Shown piece after piece: positions 27,427-42,773 of a stretch of DNA of 42,773 nucleotides. The translations under genes and the position numbers were made by a program. The notes below the pieces were generated by a model, which was not told the origin of the DNA, did not search any database, and worked only from the letters and a program-made list of their open reading frames with translations. Origin of the DNA: Octopus sinensis (Eukaryota). Where the stretch lies: assembly GCF_006345805.1 (NCBI RefSeq), contig NW_021835142.1:1-42773 (forward strand), in the 5' to 3' direction. The number at the start of each line of letters is the position of its first letter. Within the stretch, counting starts at the first letter, position 1.

Positions 27427-27766
27427 AGGCGCATGGCTCAGTGGTTAGAGTGTCGAGCTTATGATCGTGAGGTTGTGAGCTCGAATCCCGGACCGGGCTG
27501 TGTGTTGTGTTCTCGAGCAAGGCACTTTATTTCACGTTGCTCCAGTTCACTCAGCTGTAGAAATGAGTTGCGACGTCACTGGTTCCAAGCTGTATCGACC
27601 TTTGTCTTTCCCTTGGATAACACTGGTGGCGTGGAAGGGGAGGTGGTATGCATGGGCAACTGCTGGCCTTCCATAAAAACAACCTTGCCCAGACTTGTGT
27701 CTAGGAGGGTAACTTTCTAGGTGTAATCCCATGGTCATTCATGACCGAAGGGGGTCTTTACCCTTT
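27427..27766 (+). mobile_element. tRNA-derived SINE, family D
   Basis: A box tggctcagtggttag, B box gagctcgaatccc, CORE-like gtgttctcgagcaaggcacttta. Confidence 0.85.
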
Positions 27767-31651: not shown

Positions 31652-32357
31652 TGCAATATATCTATGAAACATTGGAATGTAATTTTTGTGGAAAAGAATA
31701 TCAGTGGAGCTAACAACTTCTGCGACGTCTATAAGACAATGGAATATGTCTTTGGGAGAAAGAAATATCAACTGACGTAACATTTACTAATTCTAGACTA
31801 CAATGGAATATAATTGTATATATATATATATATATGCAATTGTTTTCGTTCCAGCACACGATCTCAGATCAGGTCACTTGCTATGCATGTACATCTCCGT
31901 AAATGGAATATAAATTTTCTAGAAAGATTTACCAATAGGAATAACATCGACCAACTGTCCGCTCTTGGGAGAGGTGAATAGCAGATCTTCAGAGAAGGAT
32001 CCCCCACCGCTCATGTAAACGTTTCGGTTCTTACGTTCTTACACTCTGAGAGCGACGGAGCGCATCAGGTTCTAACTTCTGGGTACTTCTTTGGTACCGC
32101 ATTGTGCGCCATTGTCTGTATTGTAACTCTACTGGCTGTTAAAAGTGCTCCAGATCCAAGGTACTTTGGCATTGAAACCAATTCTTTCGAACCGTCAGAG
32201 CGAATGGATCTTTGGAAAAACTAAATATGAAATGTTGCGCCTGTTATCAACTCTTTTAGAAAATTACGTTTTGTACTTCTGAAAATACAATTATCAGCAT
32301 TCTTACCGCTACCAGTAAATTCATCATCACCATCGTTACCACCAGCATCATCAGTAG

Positions 32358-32743
32358 AGGCGCAATGGCCCAGTAGTTAGGGCAGCGGACTCGCGGTCGG
32401 AGGATCGCGGTTTCGATTCCCGAGACCGGGCGTTGTGTGTGTTTATTGAGCGAAAACACCTAAAGCTCCACGAGGCTCCGGCAGGGAGTGGTGGCGACCC
32501 CTGTTGTACTCTTTCACCCCAACTTTCTCGCACTCTTACTTCCTGTTCCTTGTCCCCGACTTCCTACGCAACTGCTGAACCTGGATGCACATTCATCCAT
32601 CCGTTGATGCTCTTGGTGTCGGGGGTTGACCTGCTTTCTCTTCTGCGGGTATTACGAATAGCAAAGGACCACGATTCGGTCTTCTCCCATCTTGCGAGCT
32701 CTGGGAAGAAGACCGCTTCGCTCAACAGCAACAGCAACAGCAA
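32358..32743 (+). mobile_element. Full-length tRNA-derived SINE, family C, with (CAGCAA)n tail
   Basis: A box tggcccagtagttagg, B box ggtttcgattccc, body shared with 21540, tail shared with 5101. Confidence 0.9.
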
Positions 32744-33164
32744 CCATCATCATCATCATCATCATCATCACATGTTCTATAATAACCAATACAGCTGCTG
32801 TCAATGTTATTACCACGACAAGCAAAGTTTGCATCTACCGCTGGAACCAATACGCCATCTGTCTCAGCGCCACTGGAACCCATATTTCAACCCATCGCAA
32901 CGGCACCGGAAACACCAAACACAATGGCGCCATGATAAATCTCCAACAACTTCACCCGCAGTGGCGGCACCAGCGGTTTCACCAGCGCTCAACAACCACC
33001 AGCACCACCACCGCCACCACCAACACCATCAACAACAACAGCAGCAGCACTATCATCGCCCGCCGCCGCCGCCGCCGACACCGTCGGTGCCGATTGTCGA
33101 ACTGTCAAAACCAATAAACGCCAAAGATTGTTCCAAAAACCGTTGCTGAACGCTTTTATGTCAT

Positions 33165-34954: not shown

Positions 34955-35686
34955 GAGTGAGAGAGCAGTGCATGCTATCAAAATGACACTGGGGTAAAAT
35001 ATACGAAGCCCAGTATATCCATCTGATAAGGCGGTGAGCCGGCAGAAACGTTAGCACGCCGGGCAAAATGCTCAGCGGTATTTCGCTGTCACTACGTTCT
35101 GAGTTCAAATCCCGCCGAGGTCGACTTTGCCTTTCATCCTTTCGGGGTCGATTAAATAAGTGCCAGATACGCACTGGGGTCGATATAATCGCCTTAATCC
35201 GTCTGTCTGTCCTTGTTTGTCTTCCCTGTGTTTAGCCCCTTGTGGATAGTAAAGAAATAGGTACACTAGGCACATGCATCACAACCATATGTGCGCGACA
35301 TGATGATCCTATATCAAGATAAACAGCACGTGACCTTGCAGGTGGGGCCCAGTTAGAATTTTCTTCTAGTCGAGTAACCCATCCCGTCCAAATGTCCCTG
35401 AATAAGGGTTGTTTAAGGATGTTGAACGAAACACCCATGTTTCCAGAGGTGAATTATTGGCTATGATGTTCCCCTACTACTTCTGCTCGTGATCGTATCG
35501 TCAGCCACTAAGGGACATGCTCAACTGGTTAAGGTCAAACAACTAACAAGCAAATCTGTGGTATTGAGCAGAATATTTGCTGTAAAATCCATCTTTTATA
35601 CCAAGACAAAACAATGTACATGATAACAGTTCCAATCAGTTAAGATCAGAAGCCATGAGAGTCACTGCCTATTACTGCATCAGGGC

Positions 35687-35690
<4 letters not shown>
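34955..35690. mobile_element. ~550-bp unclassified element interrupted by a nested SINE
   Basis: Same ends as 10844-11401 (gagtgagagagcag...cagggcattt). Confidence 0.9.
35030..35261 (+). mobile_element. SINE family A, long-tail subfamily, nested in the 550-bp element
   Basis: Splits ctgataag|ggtacac; ends ttagccccttgtggatagtaaagaaatagg. Confidence 0.9.
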
Positions 35691-38298
<2,608 letters not shown>

Positions 38299-38300
38299 GA

Positions 38301-38410
38301 GGACGCATGGCGTAGTGATTAGGGTATTGCACTCACAGTTGCGTGGTCGTGGTTTCAGTTCCCAGACCGGGTGGTGCGTTGTGTTCTTGAGCAAAGCACT
38401 TCATCTCACG
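38301..38410 (+). mobile_element. tRNA-derived SINE head (family D-like)
   Basis: tggcgtagtgattagg...ggtttcagttccc...gttgtgttcttgagcaaagcactt. Confidence 0.75.
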
Positions 38411-39370
38411 TGTGTGATTAAAGTGGAGGATAAAAATCAATTGAGCCAGTGACTCTACAGACATTTTAATGACTGGCGGCACGAAGCGCAGGTTTTCTAC
38501 AACAAGCTCAAAGACAAGTAAAACCTTTACGTAACCTTTTGCTTATTGTCTTCCCTTATCGTCAGTGACCAGTGTTAAAGCTAGAATACATCCTAAACCT
38601 ATTTCTTTATTACCCACAAGGGGCTTAACACAGAGGGGACAAACAAGGACAGATATAGGTATTAAGTAGATTACATCGACCCCAGTGCGTAACTGGTACT
38701 TAATTAATCGACCCAGAAAGGATGAAAGGAAAAGTCGACCTCGGCGGAATTTGAACTCAGAACGTAACGGCAGAGGAAATACCGCAAAGCACTTCGCCCG
38801 GCGTGCTAACAAGTCTGCCAGCTCGCCGCCTTTCCTATACCTATTTCTTTATTACCCACAAGGGGCTGAACACAGAGGGGACAAACAAGGACAGACATAG
38901 GTATTAAGTCGATTACATCGACCCCAGTGCGTAACTGGTACTTAATTTATCGACCCCGAAAGGATGAAGCTTCGTGATATACCAAGAATGTGTGTGTGTA
39001 AAGGAGTAGAAAGTTCAAATGAATGTTTGCACACAAACTTGAAAGAATGATGAGAATATGTTAGAGTATAGCGAACTGGTGACAGATGGTTGCAGTTATT
39101 CCTGGGTACTTGACAAAAGTTGAACGTTTAGTTGACTGAAAAACTGAGGAAAGAAAAGGAAATTGAAAACGGTAGAAAGCGAACGGCGTTTGTGAATTCT
39201 TCAACCCCGGCAGCAATTTAGAAATGGTCACGTGCTTTGGGTGTTTTCATAATTTTTTTTTTTTTGTTTTGGTTCTTTGTAGGAAAATTTGAATTAAGAA
39301 TTTGTATAAAAGTAAATTTGAAAATAAAATAACGGGAAACGGAATTAAATGTTAAAAACTGTGAAAGGAG
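38411..39370. repeat. Left arm of an inverted duplication (interrupted by SINEs at 38601-38968)
   Basis: Reverse complement aligns to 42105-42750. Confidence 0.9.
38601..38968 (-). mobile_element. Two tandem family A long-tail SINEs (38601-38832 full length; 38843-38968 5'-truncated)
   Basis: Each begins on the plus strand with atttctttattacccacaagggg; separated by a target duplication tcctaaacct/tcctatacct. Confidence 0.9.
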
Positions 39371-39422
39371 GATAGGTAGAATGTACGTGAAAAGATAATA
39401 TTTAAAAATTGATTTAAAGAAT

Positions 39423-39464
<42 letters not shown>

Positions 39465-39577
39465 GCACATACGTATATATGTATTTGTATATATATAAAT
39501 ATATATATATGTGTGTGTATGTGTGTGTGTATACATACACATATATACATATATGCACTCATACATATCTATATTTG

Positions 39578-39636
<59 letters not shown>

Positions 39637-39644
39637 GTTTTTGT

Positions 39645-40124
39645 TTATGTCTAGTTCGGGTATATTCTGTTAAGAACCTGGTAGAGTACAATATAAAGCG
39701 TGTCCACCTTCATATTTTACCCTGTGCTAACCAGTAGTAGTATCATAACATACTTCCAGATTTGTGCTTAGGCATTTGTCCTGTAGGAGTAGTTATTGGA
39801 GTCAACAATAAAGGGGGTAAATTTGGACATTTATTCTTTAATCACTACAATTGTTTCCACGCAACATAGTTCTCGAAGCATGCAGGTACTTGATTATGTA
39901 ACTCTTTCTCTGCATTATGAAATCTAGTTGTGTTTCCTCAGGCGATATGTAAATATTGTCTCCGTAAGTTCAAAATATTTGGATTCAAGAACATACTCTT
40001 TGTCTGTCGTGGTCTGAATTTAGCAGTAGTCTTTGAGTTTCCCAGGTTGAGTTGTGTGGCAAACTTCTTTGAGTGTGTCAATGTTGTGGGATTGTGATTC
40101 TGATACTGTTAAAGTGGTGGCCAT
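39645..40124 (-). pseudogene. Decayed, frameshifted ORF of unknown identity (possibly retroelement ORF1)
   Basis: ATG at 40124 (aaATGgcc); MATTLTVSESQSHNIDTLKEVCH...KEYVLESKYFELTET... and KNKCPNLPPLLLTPITTP...RWTRFILYSTRFLTEY with stops and frameshifts; family not recognised with certainty. Confidence 0.35.
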
Positions 40125-40380
40125 TTAAAGGGATTGGCATTTGATTTCTTTGTACTGTTGATTTGTTCTTCATGGTTGGTTACACATGCGATTGTCCTTA
40201 GCTGACCTTTAAGATTCGGGCTATACGTACACATTATATGTTGGTATATATATACTTCTATATACGTACTAACGCTCGGACACAAACAGACACACTCACA
40301 CGCACACGCACACAGACACAGACACACACACACAGAAACACATACATATATATATATGTTCATACATACATATATATATA

Positions 40381-40458
40381 ACAATTTAACAAATAAAACA
40401 TATGCATACATACATACATACATATATGTACATACCTACATCTATAAGTATATATACA

Positions 40459-40527
<69 letters not shown>

Positions 40528-40695
40528 GAGTACTGGACGCCACAAATAAACGTAGAACGCAACCGAAACGAGAACATAAAAAACAAACAAGGAAACGGAC
40601 TCTTTTAACAACGAAAAAACAGAGTACAAGACAAACAATACAAGGAATATTCCCCTTCATCAGCTGCCCCTGGTTCGACTTAATGCATGTTTCGA
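40381..40695. mobile_element. TA-embedded dispersed repeat (family of 22500-22765)
   Basis: See 22500; carries an expanded internal (TA)n. Confidence 0.7.
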
Positions 40696-40800
40696 TATAT
40701 GTATATGTATATATATATATATGTTTACATATCCCAGAGTTAGCATCGGTGCGCGACCTGAGAATCCATATGAGCATCGACGCAACTTTCCATGTGCACA

Positions 40801-40902
40801 TTGCCCGAGGCTATATTAGAAAACACTTGCTGAAGATGCCACGCAGTGACACTGACCCCGGAACCATGTGATTGGAAAGCAAGGTCCTTACCACACAGCC
40901 AC
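40801..40902 (-). mobile_element. CORE-type SINE head fragment
   Basis: cacttgc...gccacgcagtg...ccggaaccatgtg...ttaccacacagccac. Confidence 0.8.
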
Positions 40903-40942
40903 AAATTTAAATACATCTATCTATCTATCTATCTATCTATCT

Positions 40943-41168
40943 ATAAATTAGAGAAAAACCACCATTATGTAATTCAAACAATGTAATTCGAATTGAAGTT
41001 ATAGCCACGAAACGTACGTAGTCATTTTACTTATATATTGTTTATTCATTTTTTTGTACTTTTAGTGATCTAGTTATATGTTTTATAATATATTTTATTT
41101 TTTATTTATGATTTGGTTAACGTCAATCATTGTTTGAATTACATAATGGTGCTTTATCTCTAATTTAT
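40943..41168. mobile_element. 226-bp fold-back element with 41-bp terminal inverted repeats, TA-flanked
   Basis: 40943-40983 vs reverse complement of 41128-41168: 39/41 identical. Confidence 0.8.
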
Positions 41169-41317
41169 ATATATTATATATTTATATTGTGAAATTTGAT
41201 TTAGTATTAAATTGAACTTTTCCCTGTAAATTTGGAATTATACTCCCTAATATTATATATATATATATATATGACTCTCTCTCTCTGACTGTTTGTCTGA
41301 CTCTGCGTGTATGTGTT

Positions 41318-41350
<33 letters not shown>

Positions 41351-41672
41351 TTGTTGTGTGTGTGTGTGTGGTGTGTGTGTGTGTGTGTTTTCGTTGGGTG
41401 AACTGACTGACAACAATTGAAGACTCCGATAAAATATTTGGAGTTAATCTTTCTTTTTGTTTTGTTGTTTTTTATGGTTGATTTATTTATTCCTTTTCAA
41501 CAGATTTTATTCTTCGTTTTTGTTGACTGAACCTTAACAATCTGTTCATTTTCTCCTCCTCCTCCTCCCCCGCCTCCTTCTCGTCGCCGTCATCATCCCC
41601 ACTATCATCACCATCATCATGATCATCACCACCATCACCGTCATCCCCATCTTAACCGTCATCATCATCACT

Positions 41673-41720
<48 letters not shown>

Positions 41721-42104
41721 GTCGTCGTCCTCTTCGCCGTCGTTCTCGTCCTCATCTTCATTCTGATTATCGTTTCGTTGTTTTCTTAACTTTAATTATT
41801 TCATCAAGAGTTCCTAATCTTATTTTAATCTTTGTTATTCTTTTAATAAAAAAAATACGTAACATATTATACATATGTATATGTGTGTGTGCGTGCGTGT
41901 GTGCGCGTGTGTTTGTCGTTTGTGTCTATGTGTGTGTGTGTGTGTGTGTGTCTTTATATATAATATGCAATATATGAGCACACACACACACACACGTATA
42001 GATACATACACATACACATATATTCGTACGTATGTATATAATTCGTTTCCTAGTTGCCGTTGAATATCCGCTTTTGAAATATTTTTGTTTATTTCTTTCT
42101 TCTA

Positions 42105-42750
42105 CTTTTCACTGTTGTTAGCGTTTAATTCATTATTTTATTTTAGTTTTGAAATTTCCTGATACAAACATTTTTTTAATTCAAATTTTCTTATCAGCAA
42201 AAGAGAAACAAACAACAAAATAATATTTACGAAAAACACCCAAAGCACGTGACCATTTCTAAATTGCTGCCGGGGTTGAAGAATTCACAAACGTCGTTCG
42301 CTTTCTACCGTTTTCAATTTTCTTTTCTTTCCTCAGTTTTTCAGTCAACTAAGCGTTCAACTTTTGTCAAGTACCCAGGAATAACTGCAACCATCTGTCA
42401 CCAGTTCGCTATAGTCTAACATATTCTCATCATTCTTTCAAGTTTGTGCGCAAATATTCAATTGAACGCTCTCCTCATATACGCACGCGCACTCACATAC
42501 ACACACAAACACCCACACACACACACACACATCCTTGATATATTACGAAGCAGGTATAGGATTTATTCTAGCTTTAACACCGACCTCTGACTATAAGCAA
42601 AGAGAATAAGCAAAACGTGTAAACATTTTGCATATCGCCTTTCGGTTTGTGCCGCGAGTCATTAAAATGTCTGTAGAATTACTCGCTCCCAAAAGTCGGA
42701 CAAGTTTGTGGCAAAAATACAATTGTTCTTTACTCTACTTTAATCATGCA
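42105..42750. repeat. Right arm of the inverted duplication
   Basis: Reverse complement aligns to 38411-38600 plus 38969-39370. Confidence 0.9.
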
Positions 42751-42773
42751 CATAGCGTTGAACAAATATTATT

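What the first reader, a model, noticed from the sequence alone, without database searches (positions are those of the whole stretch)
38411..42750. Inverted duplication with a 216-bp ~98% identical core inside strongly diverged arms
Seen: 39032-39247 and 42233-42448 differ at only 4 positions by my count, while the rest of the ~600-bp arms carries many substitutions and indels. The core matches none of the repeat families here, has no convincing ORF, and contains GGTCACGTG (E-box at 39229-39234 / 42246-42251) and a pyrimidine tract ending in tttttcag. Inference: local purifying selection (promoter plus first exon of a divergent paralogue pair, an ncRNA, or a transposase-binding subterminal domain of a long-TIR element) or hairpin-mediated gene conversion. 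This is the strongest unexplained signal in the window.
Basis: partly seen in the sequence, partly recalled or inferred. Interest (0 to 1): 0.7.

Follow-up and report, generated by a model that had tools for sequence, protein, structure and literature searches.

The report
Conversion patch in an inverted duplication
Two old, inverted, non-coding copies of a ~0.7-kb octopus sequence share a 212-216-bp stretch that is still 98% identical; this is most likely a copy-and-paste repair event (gene conversion) between the copies, not a gene, though a functional element cannot be excluded without other octopus genomes.

Summary
39032-39247 and the reverse complement of 42233-42448 differ at 4 of 216 positions with no gaps. 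The surrounding homologous arms (L 38411-39420, R 42044-42762) differ at 17% of aligned bases and carry 22 indel events. A change-point fit puts the low-divergence segment at 39032-39243 (LRT 56 against at most 21 in 200 permutations). The window is octopus-like, gene-poor repeat DNA.

The core has only these two copies in the window. It has no Rfam match, no RNA structure beyond shuffled controls, no through-going ORF and no protein homologue among 1.8 billion representatives. The E-box occurs at chance frequency. No target-site duplication (TSD) or transposase remnant supports a long-TIR transposon.

Divergence jumps from about 26% to under 2% at both edges. Tract length matches reported gene-conversion tracts. 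A SINE nested in the left arm looks older than the core's coalescence.

Best reading (about 0.55): a non-allelic gene-conversion tract between closely spaced inverted repeats. Purifying selection on a regulatory or RNA element, or a hairpin-RNA locus, remains possible. No cephalopod genome could be searched, so copy number and cross-species conservation stay untested. This is an ordinary phenomenon of low to moderate interest.

The parts
38304..38411 (+). 3'-truncated tRNA-like SINE fragment abutting the outer end of the left arm
   Evidence: 72% match to 27430-27537. Other copies (e.g. 32355-32550) continue past the point where this one stops.
38411..38599 (+). Left arm, outer part (old duplicate, diverged)
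   Evidence: Aligns to rc(42552-42762). Identity is 84% over aligned bases and 63% with gaps, with 7 gap events.
38600..38968 (-). SINE block inserted into the left arm after the duplication: a full copy at 38600-38832 flanked by TCCTAAACC / TCCTATACC, plus a partial copy at 38842-38968
   Evidence: Absent from the right arm, which reads ...ATCCTATACC-T-GCTTCG.... The family has 12 or more copies in the window. It is 81% identical at protein level to an Octopus vulgaris SINE-derived ORF and about 90% identical at DNA level to L001.
38969..39031 (+). Left arm, segment next to the core on the outer side, with a short (GT)n
   Evidence: 9 differences in 38998-39031, about 26%.
39032..39247 (+). 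Left copy of the near-identical core
   Evidence: 4/216 mismatches and no gap against rc(42233-42448). Change-point estimate 39032-39243.
39248..39420 (+). Left arm, inner AT-rich flank (GC 0.22)
   Evidence: 82% over aligned bases and 67% with gaps, with 14 gap events.
39421..42043 (.). Spacer: microsatellites, SINE fragments, a small MITE-like inverted repeat and 620 bp of unique sequence. No meaningful ORF.
42044..42232 (-). Right arm, inner flank
   Evidence: Aligns to 39248-39420.
42233..42448 (-). Right copy of the core
42449..42762 (-). Right arm, outer part, including an expanded (CA)n at 42466-42531
   Evidence: Homology ends about 10-20 bp before the window end.

Best explanation
An old local inverted duplication of roughly 0.65-0.7 kb of non-coding octopus DNA has decayed neutrally. 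The copies lie 2.6 kb apart and show JC distance about 0.19, many indels, a later SINE insertion and microsatellite growth.

More recently, a double-strand break or gap in one arm was repaired using the other arm as template. This is non-allelic, intrachromosomal gene conversion, probably by synthesis-dependent strand annealing. It copied about 212-222 bp and reset that stretch to identity. Four substitutions have accumulated since (JC 0.019).

Shown here: the duplication, the step-like identity profile, and the absence of coding, RNA-family, RNA-structure and transposon signatures.

Inferred: the conversion event itself, and whether it was one recent event or a residual 'island' kept similar by repeated conversion.
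For: 1. Divergence in the core is ten-fold lower than in the flanks, with abrupt edges. There are 4 events in 212 columns inside against 91 in 420 outside. The 34-39 bp just outside each edge are about 26% different, which is a step and not a taper.
2. Identity is uniform across the core regardless of any feature. The 4 differences are spread evenly.
3. Tract length of about 212-222 bp sits within published estimates: most means are 200-300 bp and the range is 50 to several hundred bp (PMC3924818).
4. Geometry favours conversion. The repeats are on the same chromosome, about 3 kb apart and inverted. Conversion between adjacent inverted paralogues with diverged flanks is documented, for example C. 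elegans hsp16 (PMC3966223) and Y-chromosome palindromes (PMC3723533).
5. A relative clock fits. The nested SINE in the left arm is about 7.6% from a rough family consensus. Per-lineage divergence is about 0.9% in the core and about 9.6% in the flanks. The arm was therefore in place long before the cores last shared an ancestor.
6. No functional signature was found. Rfam gave 0 matches in the core. Fold z-scores are +0.37 and +2.17. The 56-codon ORF has 3 of 4 changes non-synonymous and no homologue. The E-box is at chance frequency.
Against: - Conversion between sequences that are already about 17-20% diverged is strongly suppressed, so a single late event needs a rare homeologous repair. The 'island' version instead needs continuous conversion in a segment only about as long as the minimal efficient processing segment (about 200 bp).
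- With only two sequences and no outgroup, conversion and strong purifying selection predict the same pairwise pattern.
- Core GC (0.40) is no higher than the outer flank (0.37-0.40), so no GC-biased conversion signal is visible.
- Transition differences in the core plus inner flank are strand-asymmetric. Plain conversion does not predict this.
Confidence: 0.55

Rival explanations
1. Purifying selection on a non-coding functional element present in both copies, such as a cis-regulatory module, a promoter plus non-coding first exon, or an unstructured lncRNA exon. Selection would keep nearly every base of about 216 bp while the flanks drift.
For: The conservation contrast is very strong. No indel occurs in 216 bp, against 22 gap events in the flanks. 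The core contains an E-box and a pyrimidine tract followed by AG. CpG observed/expected is about 1.
Against: Removing about 90% of substitutions uniformly over 216 contiguous bases, in both paralogues, with step edges, would be ultraconserved-element behaviour. The motifs are at chance frequency. There is no known RNA family, no structure and no ORF. Homology stops about 0.2-0.6 kb either side, so no duplicated gene bodies exist for the element to serve.
Confidence: 0.2
2. A hairpin-RNA (hpRNA) or long-dsRNA locus. A + strand transcript reading through both arms would fold into a near-perfect duplex of about 219 bp, which could be processed into endo-siRNAs or serve as an ADAR substrate. Selection for pairing would then preserve arm-to-arm complementarity.
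For: In silico, the two cores pair over 219 positions on the + strand with 3 G.U pairs and one mismatch (MFE -402 kcal/mol). Three of the 4 core differences, and 9-11 of 10-12 transitions in the inner flank, are G.U-compatible on the + strand (p about 0.006-0.07 for the inner flank; 14:1 combined). hpRNAs arising from inverted duplications are known in Drosophila (PMC10317233, PMC10292708).
Against: The outer arm shows the opposite trend (6-8 against 12-13). The asymmetry test was post hoc, on small counts, in a gappy AT-rich alignment. A strand-biased mutation process gives the same pattern. No evidence of transcription or of a target gene is available. The 3-kb loop is full of microsatellites.
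Confidence: 0.08
3. Both arms are copies of a dispersed repeat: either a non-autonomous or long-TIR/foldback transposon, or two subfamilies of one element sharing a conserved core module. The core would be the family's conserved part, for example a transposase-binding or promoter region.
For: Other repeat families in the window show pairwise identities of 70-92%, similar to the arm flanks, and are often inverted. Genome-wide copy number could not be measured.
Against: There is no third copy in the 42.8-kb window or in 20 kb of O. vulgaris DNA. The arm ends have no TSD and the spacer has no transposase-like ORF. After insertion, copies decay uniformly, so a 98% core would require both insertions to be young. 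Yet the left arm already hosts a SINE about 7.6% from its consensus.
Confidence: 0.07
4. Assembly or polishing artefact. Short-read polishing or consensus calling cross-mapped reads between the two most similar parts of the arms and homogenised them.
For: Over-correction of paralogous repeats during polishing is a known failure mode (own knowledge). The core is the least repetitive and least gapped part of the arms.
Against: Four differences survive inside the core. The edges do not coincide with read-length-like scales. Cross-mapping would already require a highly similar core. Nothing else in the region looks collapsed.
Confidence: 0.05

Closest known systems
Interlocus (non-allelic) gene-conversion tracts between closely linked inverted paralogues, e.g. 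the C. elegans hsp16-1/hsp16-48 modules (PMC3966223)
   Same: Two nearby inverted copies share a block of near-identity embedded in much more diverged flanks. Tract length is in the usual hundreds of bp.
   Different: Here the converted block has no recognisable gene. The flanks remain alignable at about 83%, whereas the hsp16 flanks are fully diverged. There is no cross-species tree to show concerted evolution.
Arm-to-arm gene conversion in large sex-chromosome palindromes (human Y P1-P8; PMC3723533, PMC8600007)
   Same: Inverted repeats with a unique spacer are homogenised by intrachromosomal conversion.
   Different: Those arms are 9 kb to 1.45 Mb long, over 99.9% identical throughout, and carry genes. 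Here only about 0.2 kb of about 0.7-kb arms is homogenised and the rest has escaped.
Drosophila hairpin-RNA (hpRNA) loci producing endo-siRNAs (PMC10317233, PMC10292708)
   Same: An inverted duplication that could fold into a long, near-perfect dsRNA if transcribed.
   Different: There is no evidence of transcription, small RNAs or a homologous target gene. The loop is 3 kb. The pathway has not been shown in cephalopods in any source I read.
Long-TIR / foldback DNA transposons
   Same: Long inverted arms flank an internal segment.
   Different: No TSD, no transposase remnant, no further copies seen, and very uneven arm identity.

Membership tests
Interlocus gene-conversion tract | Two paralogous copies whose flanks show an older duplication | tested here: met
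   Flank JC distance 0.19 with 22 indel events, plus a SINE insertion in one arm only.
Interlocus gene-conversion tract | A contiguous fragment of significantly higher identity than the rest of the alignment (GENECONV-type criterion) | tested here: met
   LRT 56.3 against a permutation maximum of 20.6; binomial P = 5.5e-13.
Interlocus gene-conversion tract | Tract length within the empirically observed range | tested here: met
   212-222 bp against reported means of 200-300 bp and a range of 50 to several hundred bp.
Interlocus gene-conversion tract | Concerted evolution: within-species paralogues are closer to each other than to their orthologues in the tract but not in the flanks | not testable with these tools
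   No cephalopod genome collection is searchable. A SINE positive control also found nothing in the metagenome collection.
hpRNA / endo-siRNA locus | Inverted repeat able to form a long, near-perfect RNA duplex | tested here: met
   219 inter-arm pairs, MFE -402 kcal/mol. In silico only.
hpRNA / endo-siRNA locus | A single transcript spans both arms and produces Dicer-dependent small RNAs | not testable with these tools
   No expression data available.
hpRNA / endo-siRNA locus | Arm homology to a target gene | tested here: inconclusive
   No other copy in the window and no protein-level match. The genome itself was not searchable.
Long-TIR / foldback transposon | Target-site duplication at the outer arm ends | tested here: not met
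   Flanks CACGTGTG | arm ... arm | TGCACATA show no matching duplication. It could have decayed.
Long-TIR / foldback transposon | Transposase ORF or remnant, or multiple genomic copies | tested here: not met
   Spacer ORFs are low-complexity only. No further copies in the window or in L001. Genome-wide count not testable.
Known structured ncRNA (Rfam families) | Covariance-model match, or thermodynamic structure beyond shuffled controls | tested here: not met
   No Rfam match in the core even at E<=10. z = +0.37 and +2.17.
Protein-coding exon | Open frame across the conserved block, synonymous-biased differences, homologues | tested here: not met
   Longest ORF is 56 codons with no ATG. Three of 4 differences are non-synonymous. 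Zero homologues and no Pfam match.
Dispersed SINE/MITE core | Many copies; flanks unrelated between insertions | tested here: not met
   Only two copies in 63 kb examined. Flanks on both sides of the core are collinear and homologous between the arms.

The most novel reading that the evidence does not exclude
The inverted duplication is a cephalopod hairpin-RNA/dsRNA locus. A + strand read-through transcript folds the two cores into a ~219-bp duplex, and selection for pairing (G.U tolerated, A.C purged) has preserved the core. This would explain the strand-asymmetric transitions. The duplex would feed an endo-siRNA pathway or act as an ADAR substrate or sponge.
Probability: 0.08. Interest if true: 0.55.

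Novelty: new member of a known kind. Interest (0 to 1): 0.2.

Why it matters
If the conversion reading is right, this is a clean small example of non-allelic gene conversion in non-coding cephalopod DNA. It gives a tract length (about 0.2 kb) and shows that conversion can persist or recur between arms that are otherwise about 20% diverged. That is useful as a calibration point, and as a caution against reading identity islands as function, but it is not surprising.

It would matter more if the core proved to be conserved across octopus species or to produce small RNAs. It would then be a candidate regulatory element or hpRNA in a clade where such loci are undescribed.

Tried and rejected
- Rfam at gathering threshold on the whole window, and at E<=10 on 38300-42773: only microsatellite-driven miRNA false positives, none in the core.
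- RNA folding of the core on both strands: not more stable than shuffled sequences.
- tRNA scan: none found.
- Coding reading: 56-codon ORF only. Pfam found nothing. The word-indexed protein search found no candidate. Exhaustive HMMER against 1.84 billion representatives gave 0 hits.
- Reaching the locus or its orthologues through annotated proteins: exact look-ups of 12 window ORFs found none on record. The GC-rich 180-aa ORF at 32607-33149 has no homologue.
- DNA scans of the metagenome collection: a core 22-mer gave 0 hits. A SINE positive control also gave 0 hits, so the negative result is uninformative.
- Literature full-text search for core and SINE k-mers: 0 papers.
- One O. vulgaris locus (L001, 20 kb) was fetched via a SINE-derived annotated ORF. 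It shares the window's repeat families but not the core.
- Long-TIR transposon: no TSD and no transposase remnant.
- E-box and splice-acceptor motifs: the E-box is at chance frequency (7 seen, 5.5 expected). The pyrimidine-AG motif is not confined to the core: 3 of its 6 window occurrences lie outside the arms.
- Coding-exon arithmetic: at neutral K about 0.19, even a fully constrained exon should show more synonymous change, and no frame is open across the block.
Full report
**Observation**

The window is AT-rich (GC 0.33) eukaryotic DNA dominated by microsatellites and tRNA-derived SINEs. The SINE nested in the finding translates to a peptide 81% identical to an annotated 'hypothetical predicted protein' of Octopus vulgaris. 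The 20-kb O. vulgaris locus that encodes it shares several of the window's repeat families at 76-95% identity. I did not establish the exact species.

The reported structure is present. 39032-39247 and the reverse complement of 42233-42448 align without gaps and differ at four positions: 39066 G/C, 39127 T/C, 39159 G/A and 39186 G/A.

Homology continues on both sides of the core:
- Outer side: 38411-38599 and 38969-39031 on the left, against 42449-42762 on the right.
- Inner side: 39248-39420 on the left, against 42044-42232 on the right.

In these flanks only 82-84% of aligned bases match, and there are 22 gap events. A 369-bp SINE block (38600-38968) interrupts the left arm and is absent from the right arm. 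It was therefore inserted after the duplication.

**Is the contrast more than chance?**

Given the flank mismatch rate of 0.17, the probability of 4 or fewer mismatches in 216 positions is 5.5e-13. Fisher's test gives 1.2e-9. A two-rate change-point fit places the low-divergence segment at 39032-39243, with 2-lnL support of 39026-39041 for the start and 39234-39248 for the end. That is 4 events in 212 columns against 91 in 420 outside. The likelihood ratio is 56.3, against a maximum of 20.6 in 200 permutations.

The edges are steps. The 34 bp before the core carry 9 differences and the 39 bp after it carry 11, about 26% in each case. JC distances are 0.019 in the core and 0.19 in the flanks.

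**What the core is not**

- *A repeat family in this window.* It has only the two copies in 42.8 kb, and none in the extra 20 kb of O. vulgaris DNA. Collinear homologous sequence flanks it on both sides in both arms. Independent insertion of a young repeat into both arms is therefore excluded.
- *A known RNA.* No Rfam family reaches its gathering score anywhere in the window. At E<=10 the region gives only microsatellite-driven miRNA-model hits outside the core. No tRNA was found. Folding either strand gives z = +0.37 and +2.17 against dinucleotide shuffles.
- *Coding sequence.* The longest ORF is 56 codons, has no ATG, and takes 3 non-synonymous changes out of the 4 differences. It has no Pfam match, no word-sharing candidate among 5.8 billion clusters, and no HMMER hit among 1.84 billion representatives.
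- *Marked by informative motifs.* CACGTG occurs 7 times in the window against 5.5 expected. The pyrimidine-tract-plus-CAG motif also occurs at three window sites outside the arms and once in the left inner flank.
- *A long-TIR transposon.* The sequences outside the arm ends (CACGTGTG on the left, TGCACATA on the right) show no target-site duplication. The 2.6-kb spacer contains only low-complexity ORFs, microsatellites, SINE fragments and a small MITE-like repeat.
- *Part of a paralogous gene pair.* Homology ends at the arm ends. To the left lies a truncated SINE followed by about 2.3 kb of (ATT/ATA)n.

**Relative timing**

The full SINE copy nested in the left arm is about 7.6% from a rough consensus built from the window's own copies (13/172). 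This is an upper bound for its post-insertion decay, because the consensus mixes subfamilies. Per-lineage divergence is about 9.6% for the arm flanks and about 0.9% for the core.

The order that fits is duplication first, then SINE insertion, then the last common ancestry of the two cores. This argues against both arms being young insertions that share a conserved module.

**Most likely mechanism**

The pattern is a uniformly near-identical block of about 0.2 kb with step edges. It has no feature that tracks its limits, and it sits in two inverted copies 3 kb apart on the same molecule. That is the classical footprint of non-allelic gene conversion.

Reported mean tract lengths are mostly 200-300 bp, with a range of 50 to several hundred bp. 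The minimal efficient processing segment is about 200 bp (PMC3924818). Conversion between adjacent inverted paralogues with diverged flanks is documented in C. elegans (PMC3966223) and on a larger scale in Y-chromosome palindromes (PMC3723533).

I cannot tell a single recent homeologous repair event from a residual island kept similar by repeated conversion while its surroundings escaped. I see no need for a hairpin-mediated route, and 3 kb between the cores makes intrastrand snap-back unlikely. This last point is inference.

**Weaknesses of this reading**

- Recombination between sequences 17-20% diverged is strongly suppressed.
- No GC-bias signal is visible: core GC is 0.40 against 0.37-0.40 in the outer flank.
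- With two sequences and no outgroup, strong purifying selection gives the same pairwise picture.

**An unexplained detail**

Transition differences are strand-asymmetric. In the core plus inner flank, 12-14 are of the type that leaves a G.U wobble if a + strand RNA folds back. Equivalently, they represent an excess of C>T or A>G on the + strand in both arms. Only 1-2 are of the opposite type. For the inner flank, p is 0.006-0.07 under four of the five alignment settings tried (5:1, p = 0.22, under the fifth); the pattern was noticed post hoc. The outer arm trends the other way, 6-8 against 12-13, not significant.

A + strand read-through transcript would pair the cores over 219 positions. This keeps a hairpin-RNA reading alive (hpRNAs: PMC10317233, PMC10292708). 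A strand-biased mutation process explains the pattern equally well, and the counts are small.

**What could not be done**

None of the searchable DNA collections holds cephalopod genomes. A core 22-mer found nothing in the metagenome collection, and neither did a positive-control pattern from the window's most abundant SINE, so that negative says nothing. Attempts to reach the locus or its orthologues through annotated proteins failed.

**Verdict**

My confidence estimates are:

| Reading | Confidence |
|---|---|
| Gene-conversion tract | about 0.55 |
| Selection on a non-coding element | about 0.2 |
| hpRNA/dsRNA locus | about 0.08 |
| Repeat family or long-TIR element | about 0.07 |
| Assembly artefact | about 0.05 |

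This is a new instance of a well-known process, so interest is low to moderate.

Noticed in passing
window 38591-38968: Nested SINE block in the left arm. A full minus-strand copy at 38600-32 is flanked by a 9-bp target-site duplication (TCCTAAACC / TCCTATACC). It is followed directly by a second, 5'-truncated copy at 38842-38968 that is 96% identical to the matching part of the first. This looks like two insertions at the same A-rich site, or a local duplication.
   Followed up: partly
window 38304-38411: A tRNA-like SINE of a second family is cut off at its 3' side exactly where the left arm begins. SINEs are normally 5'-truncated, so the duplication breakpoint may lie inside an older SINE.
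   Followed up: partly
window 39032-39425 vs 42044-42448: Transition differences between the arms are strongly strand-asymmetric in the core plus inner flank (about 14:1 in favour of + strand G/T). The left inner flank has only 6 C in 173 nt. The outer arm trends the opposite way. This could be mutational strand bias or selection for RNA pairing.
   Followed up: partly
window 40938-41173: A 236-bp MITE-like unit in the spacer, with 46-bp terminal inverted repeats at 93% complementarity and 144 bp between them, in TA-rich flanks. The TSD was not resolved.
   Followed up: no
window ~35650-38300: About 2.6 kb of almost pure (ATT/ATA)n-type low-complexity sequence (GC 1-2% per kb) lies immediately upstream of the finding. 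Similar arrays occur at 11.4-12.0 kb and 17.1-17.8 kb.
   Followed up: no
window 6526-7275, 10844-11612, 35260-35899: A ~650-750-bp repeat family with three copies at 79-85% identity, each abutting an AT-rich trinucleotide array. It is unrelated to the arms of the finding.
   Followed up: no
window 32433-33149: The only GC-rich stretch in the window (GC about 0.5) carries a 238-codon open frame with His, Gln and Pro runs. Its first part is a SINE. The rest has no Pfam match and no homologue, so it is probably not an exon.
   Followed up: yes
L001 10001-10351 (O. vulgaris OX597819.1): The annotated O. vulgaris 'hypothetical predicted protein' P0001 (116 aa, single exon) is largely a translated SINE, so it is probably an annotation artefact.
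   Followed up: partly
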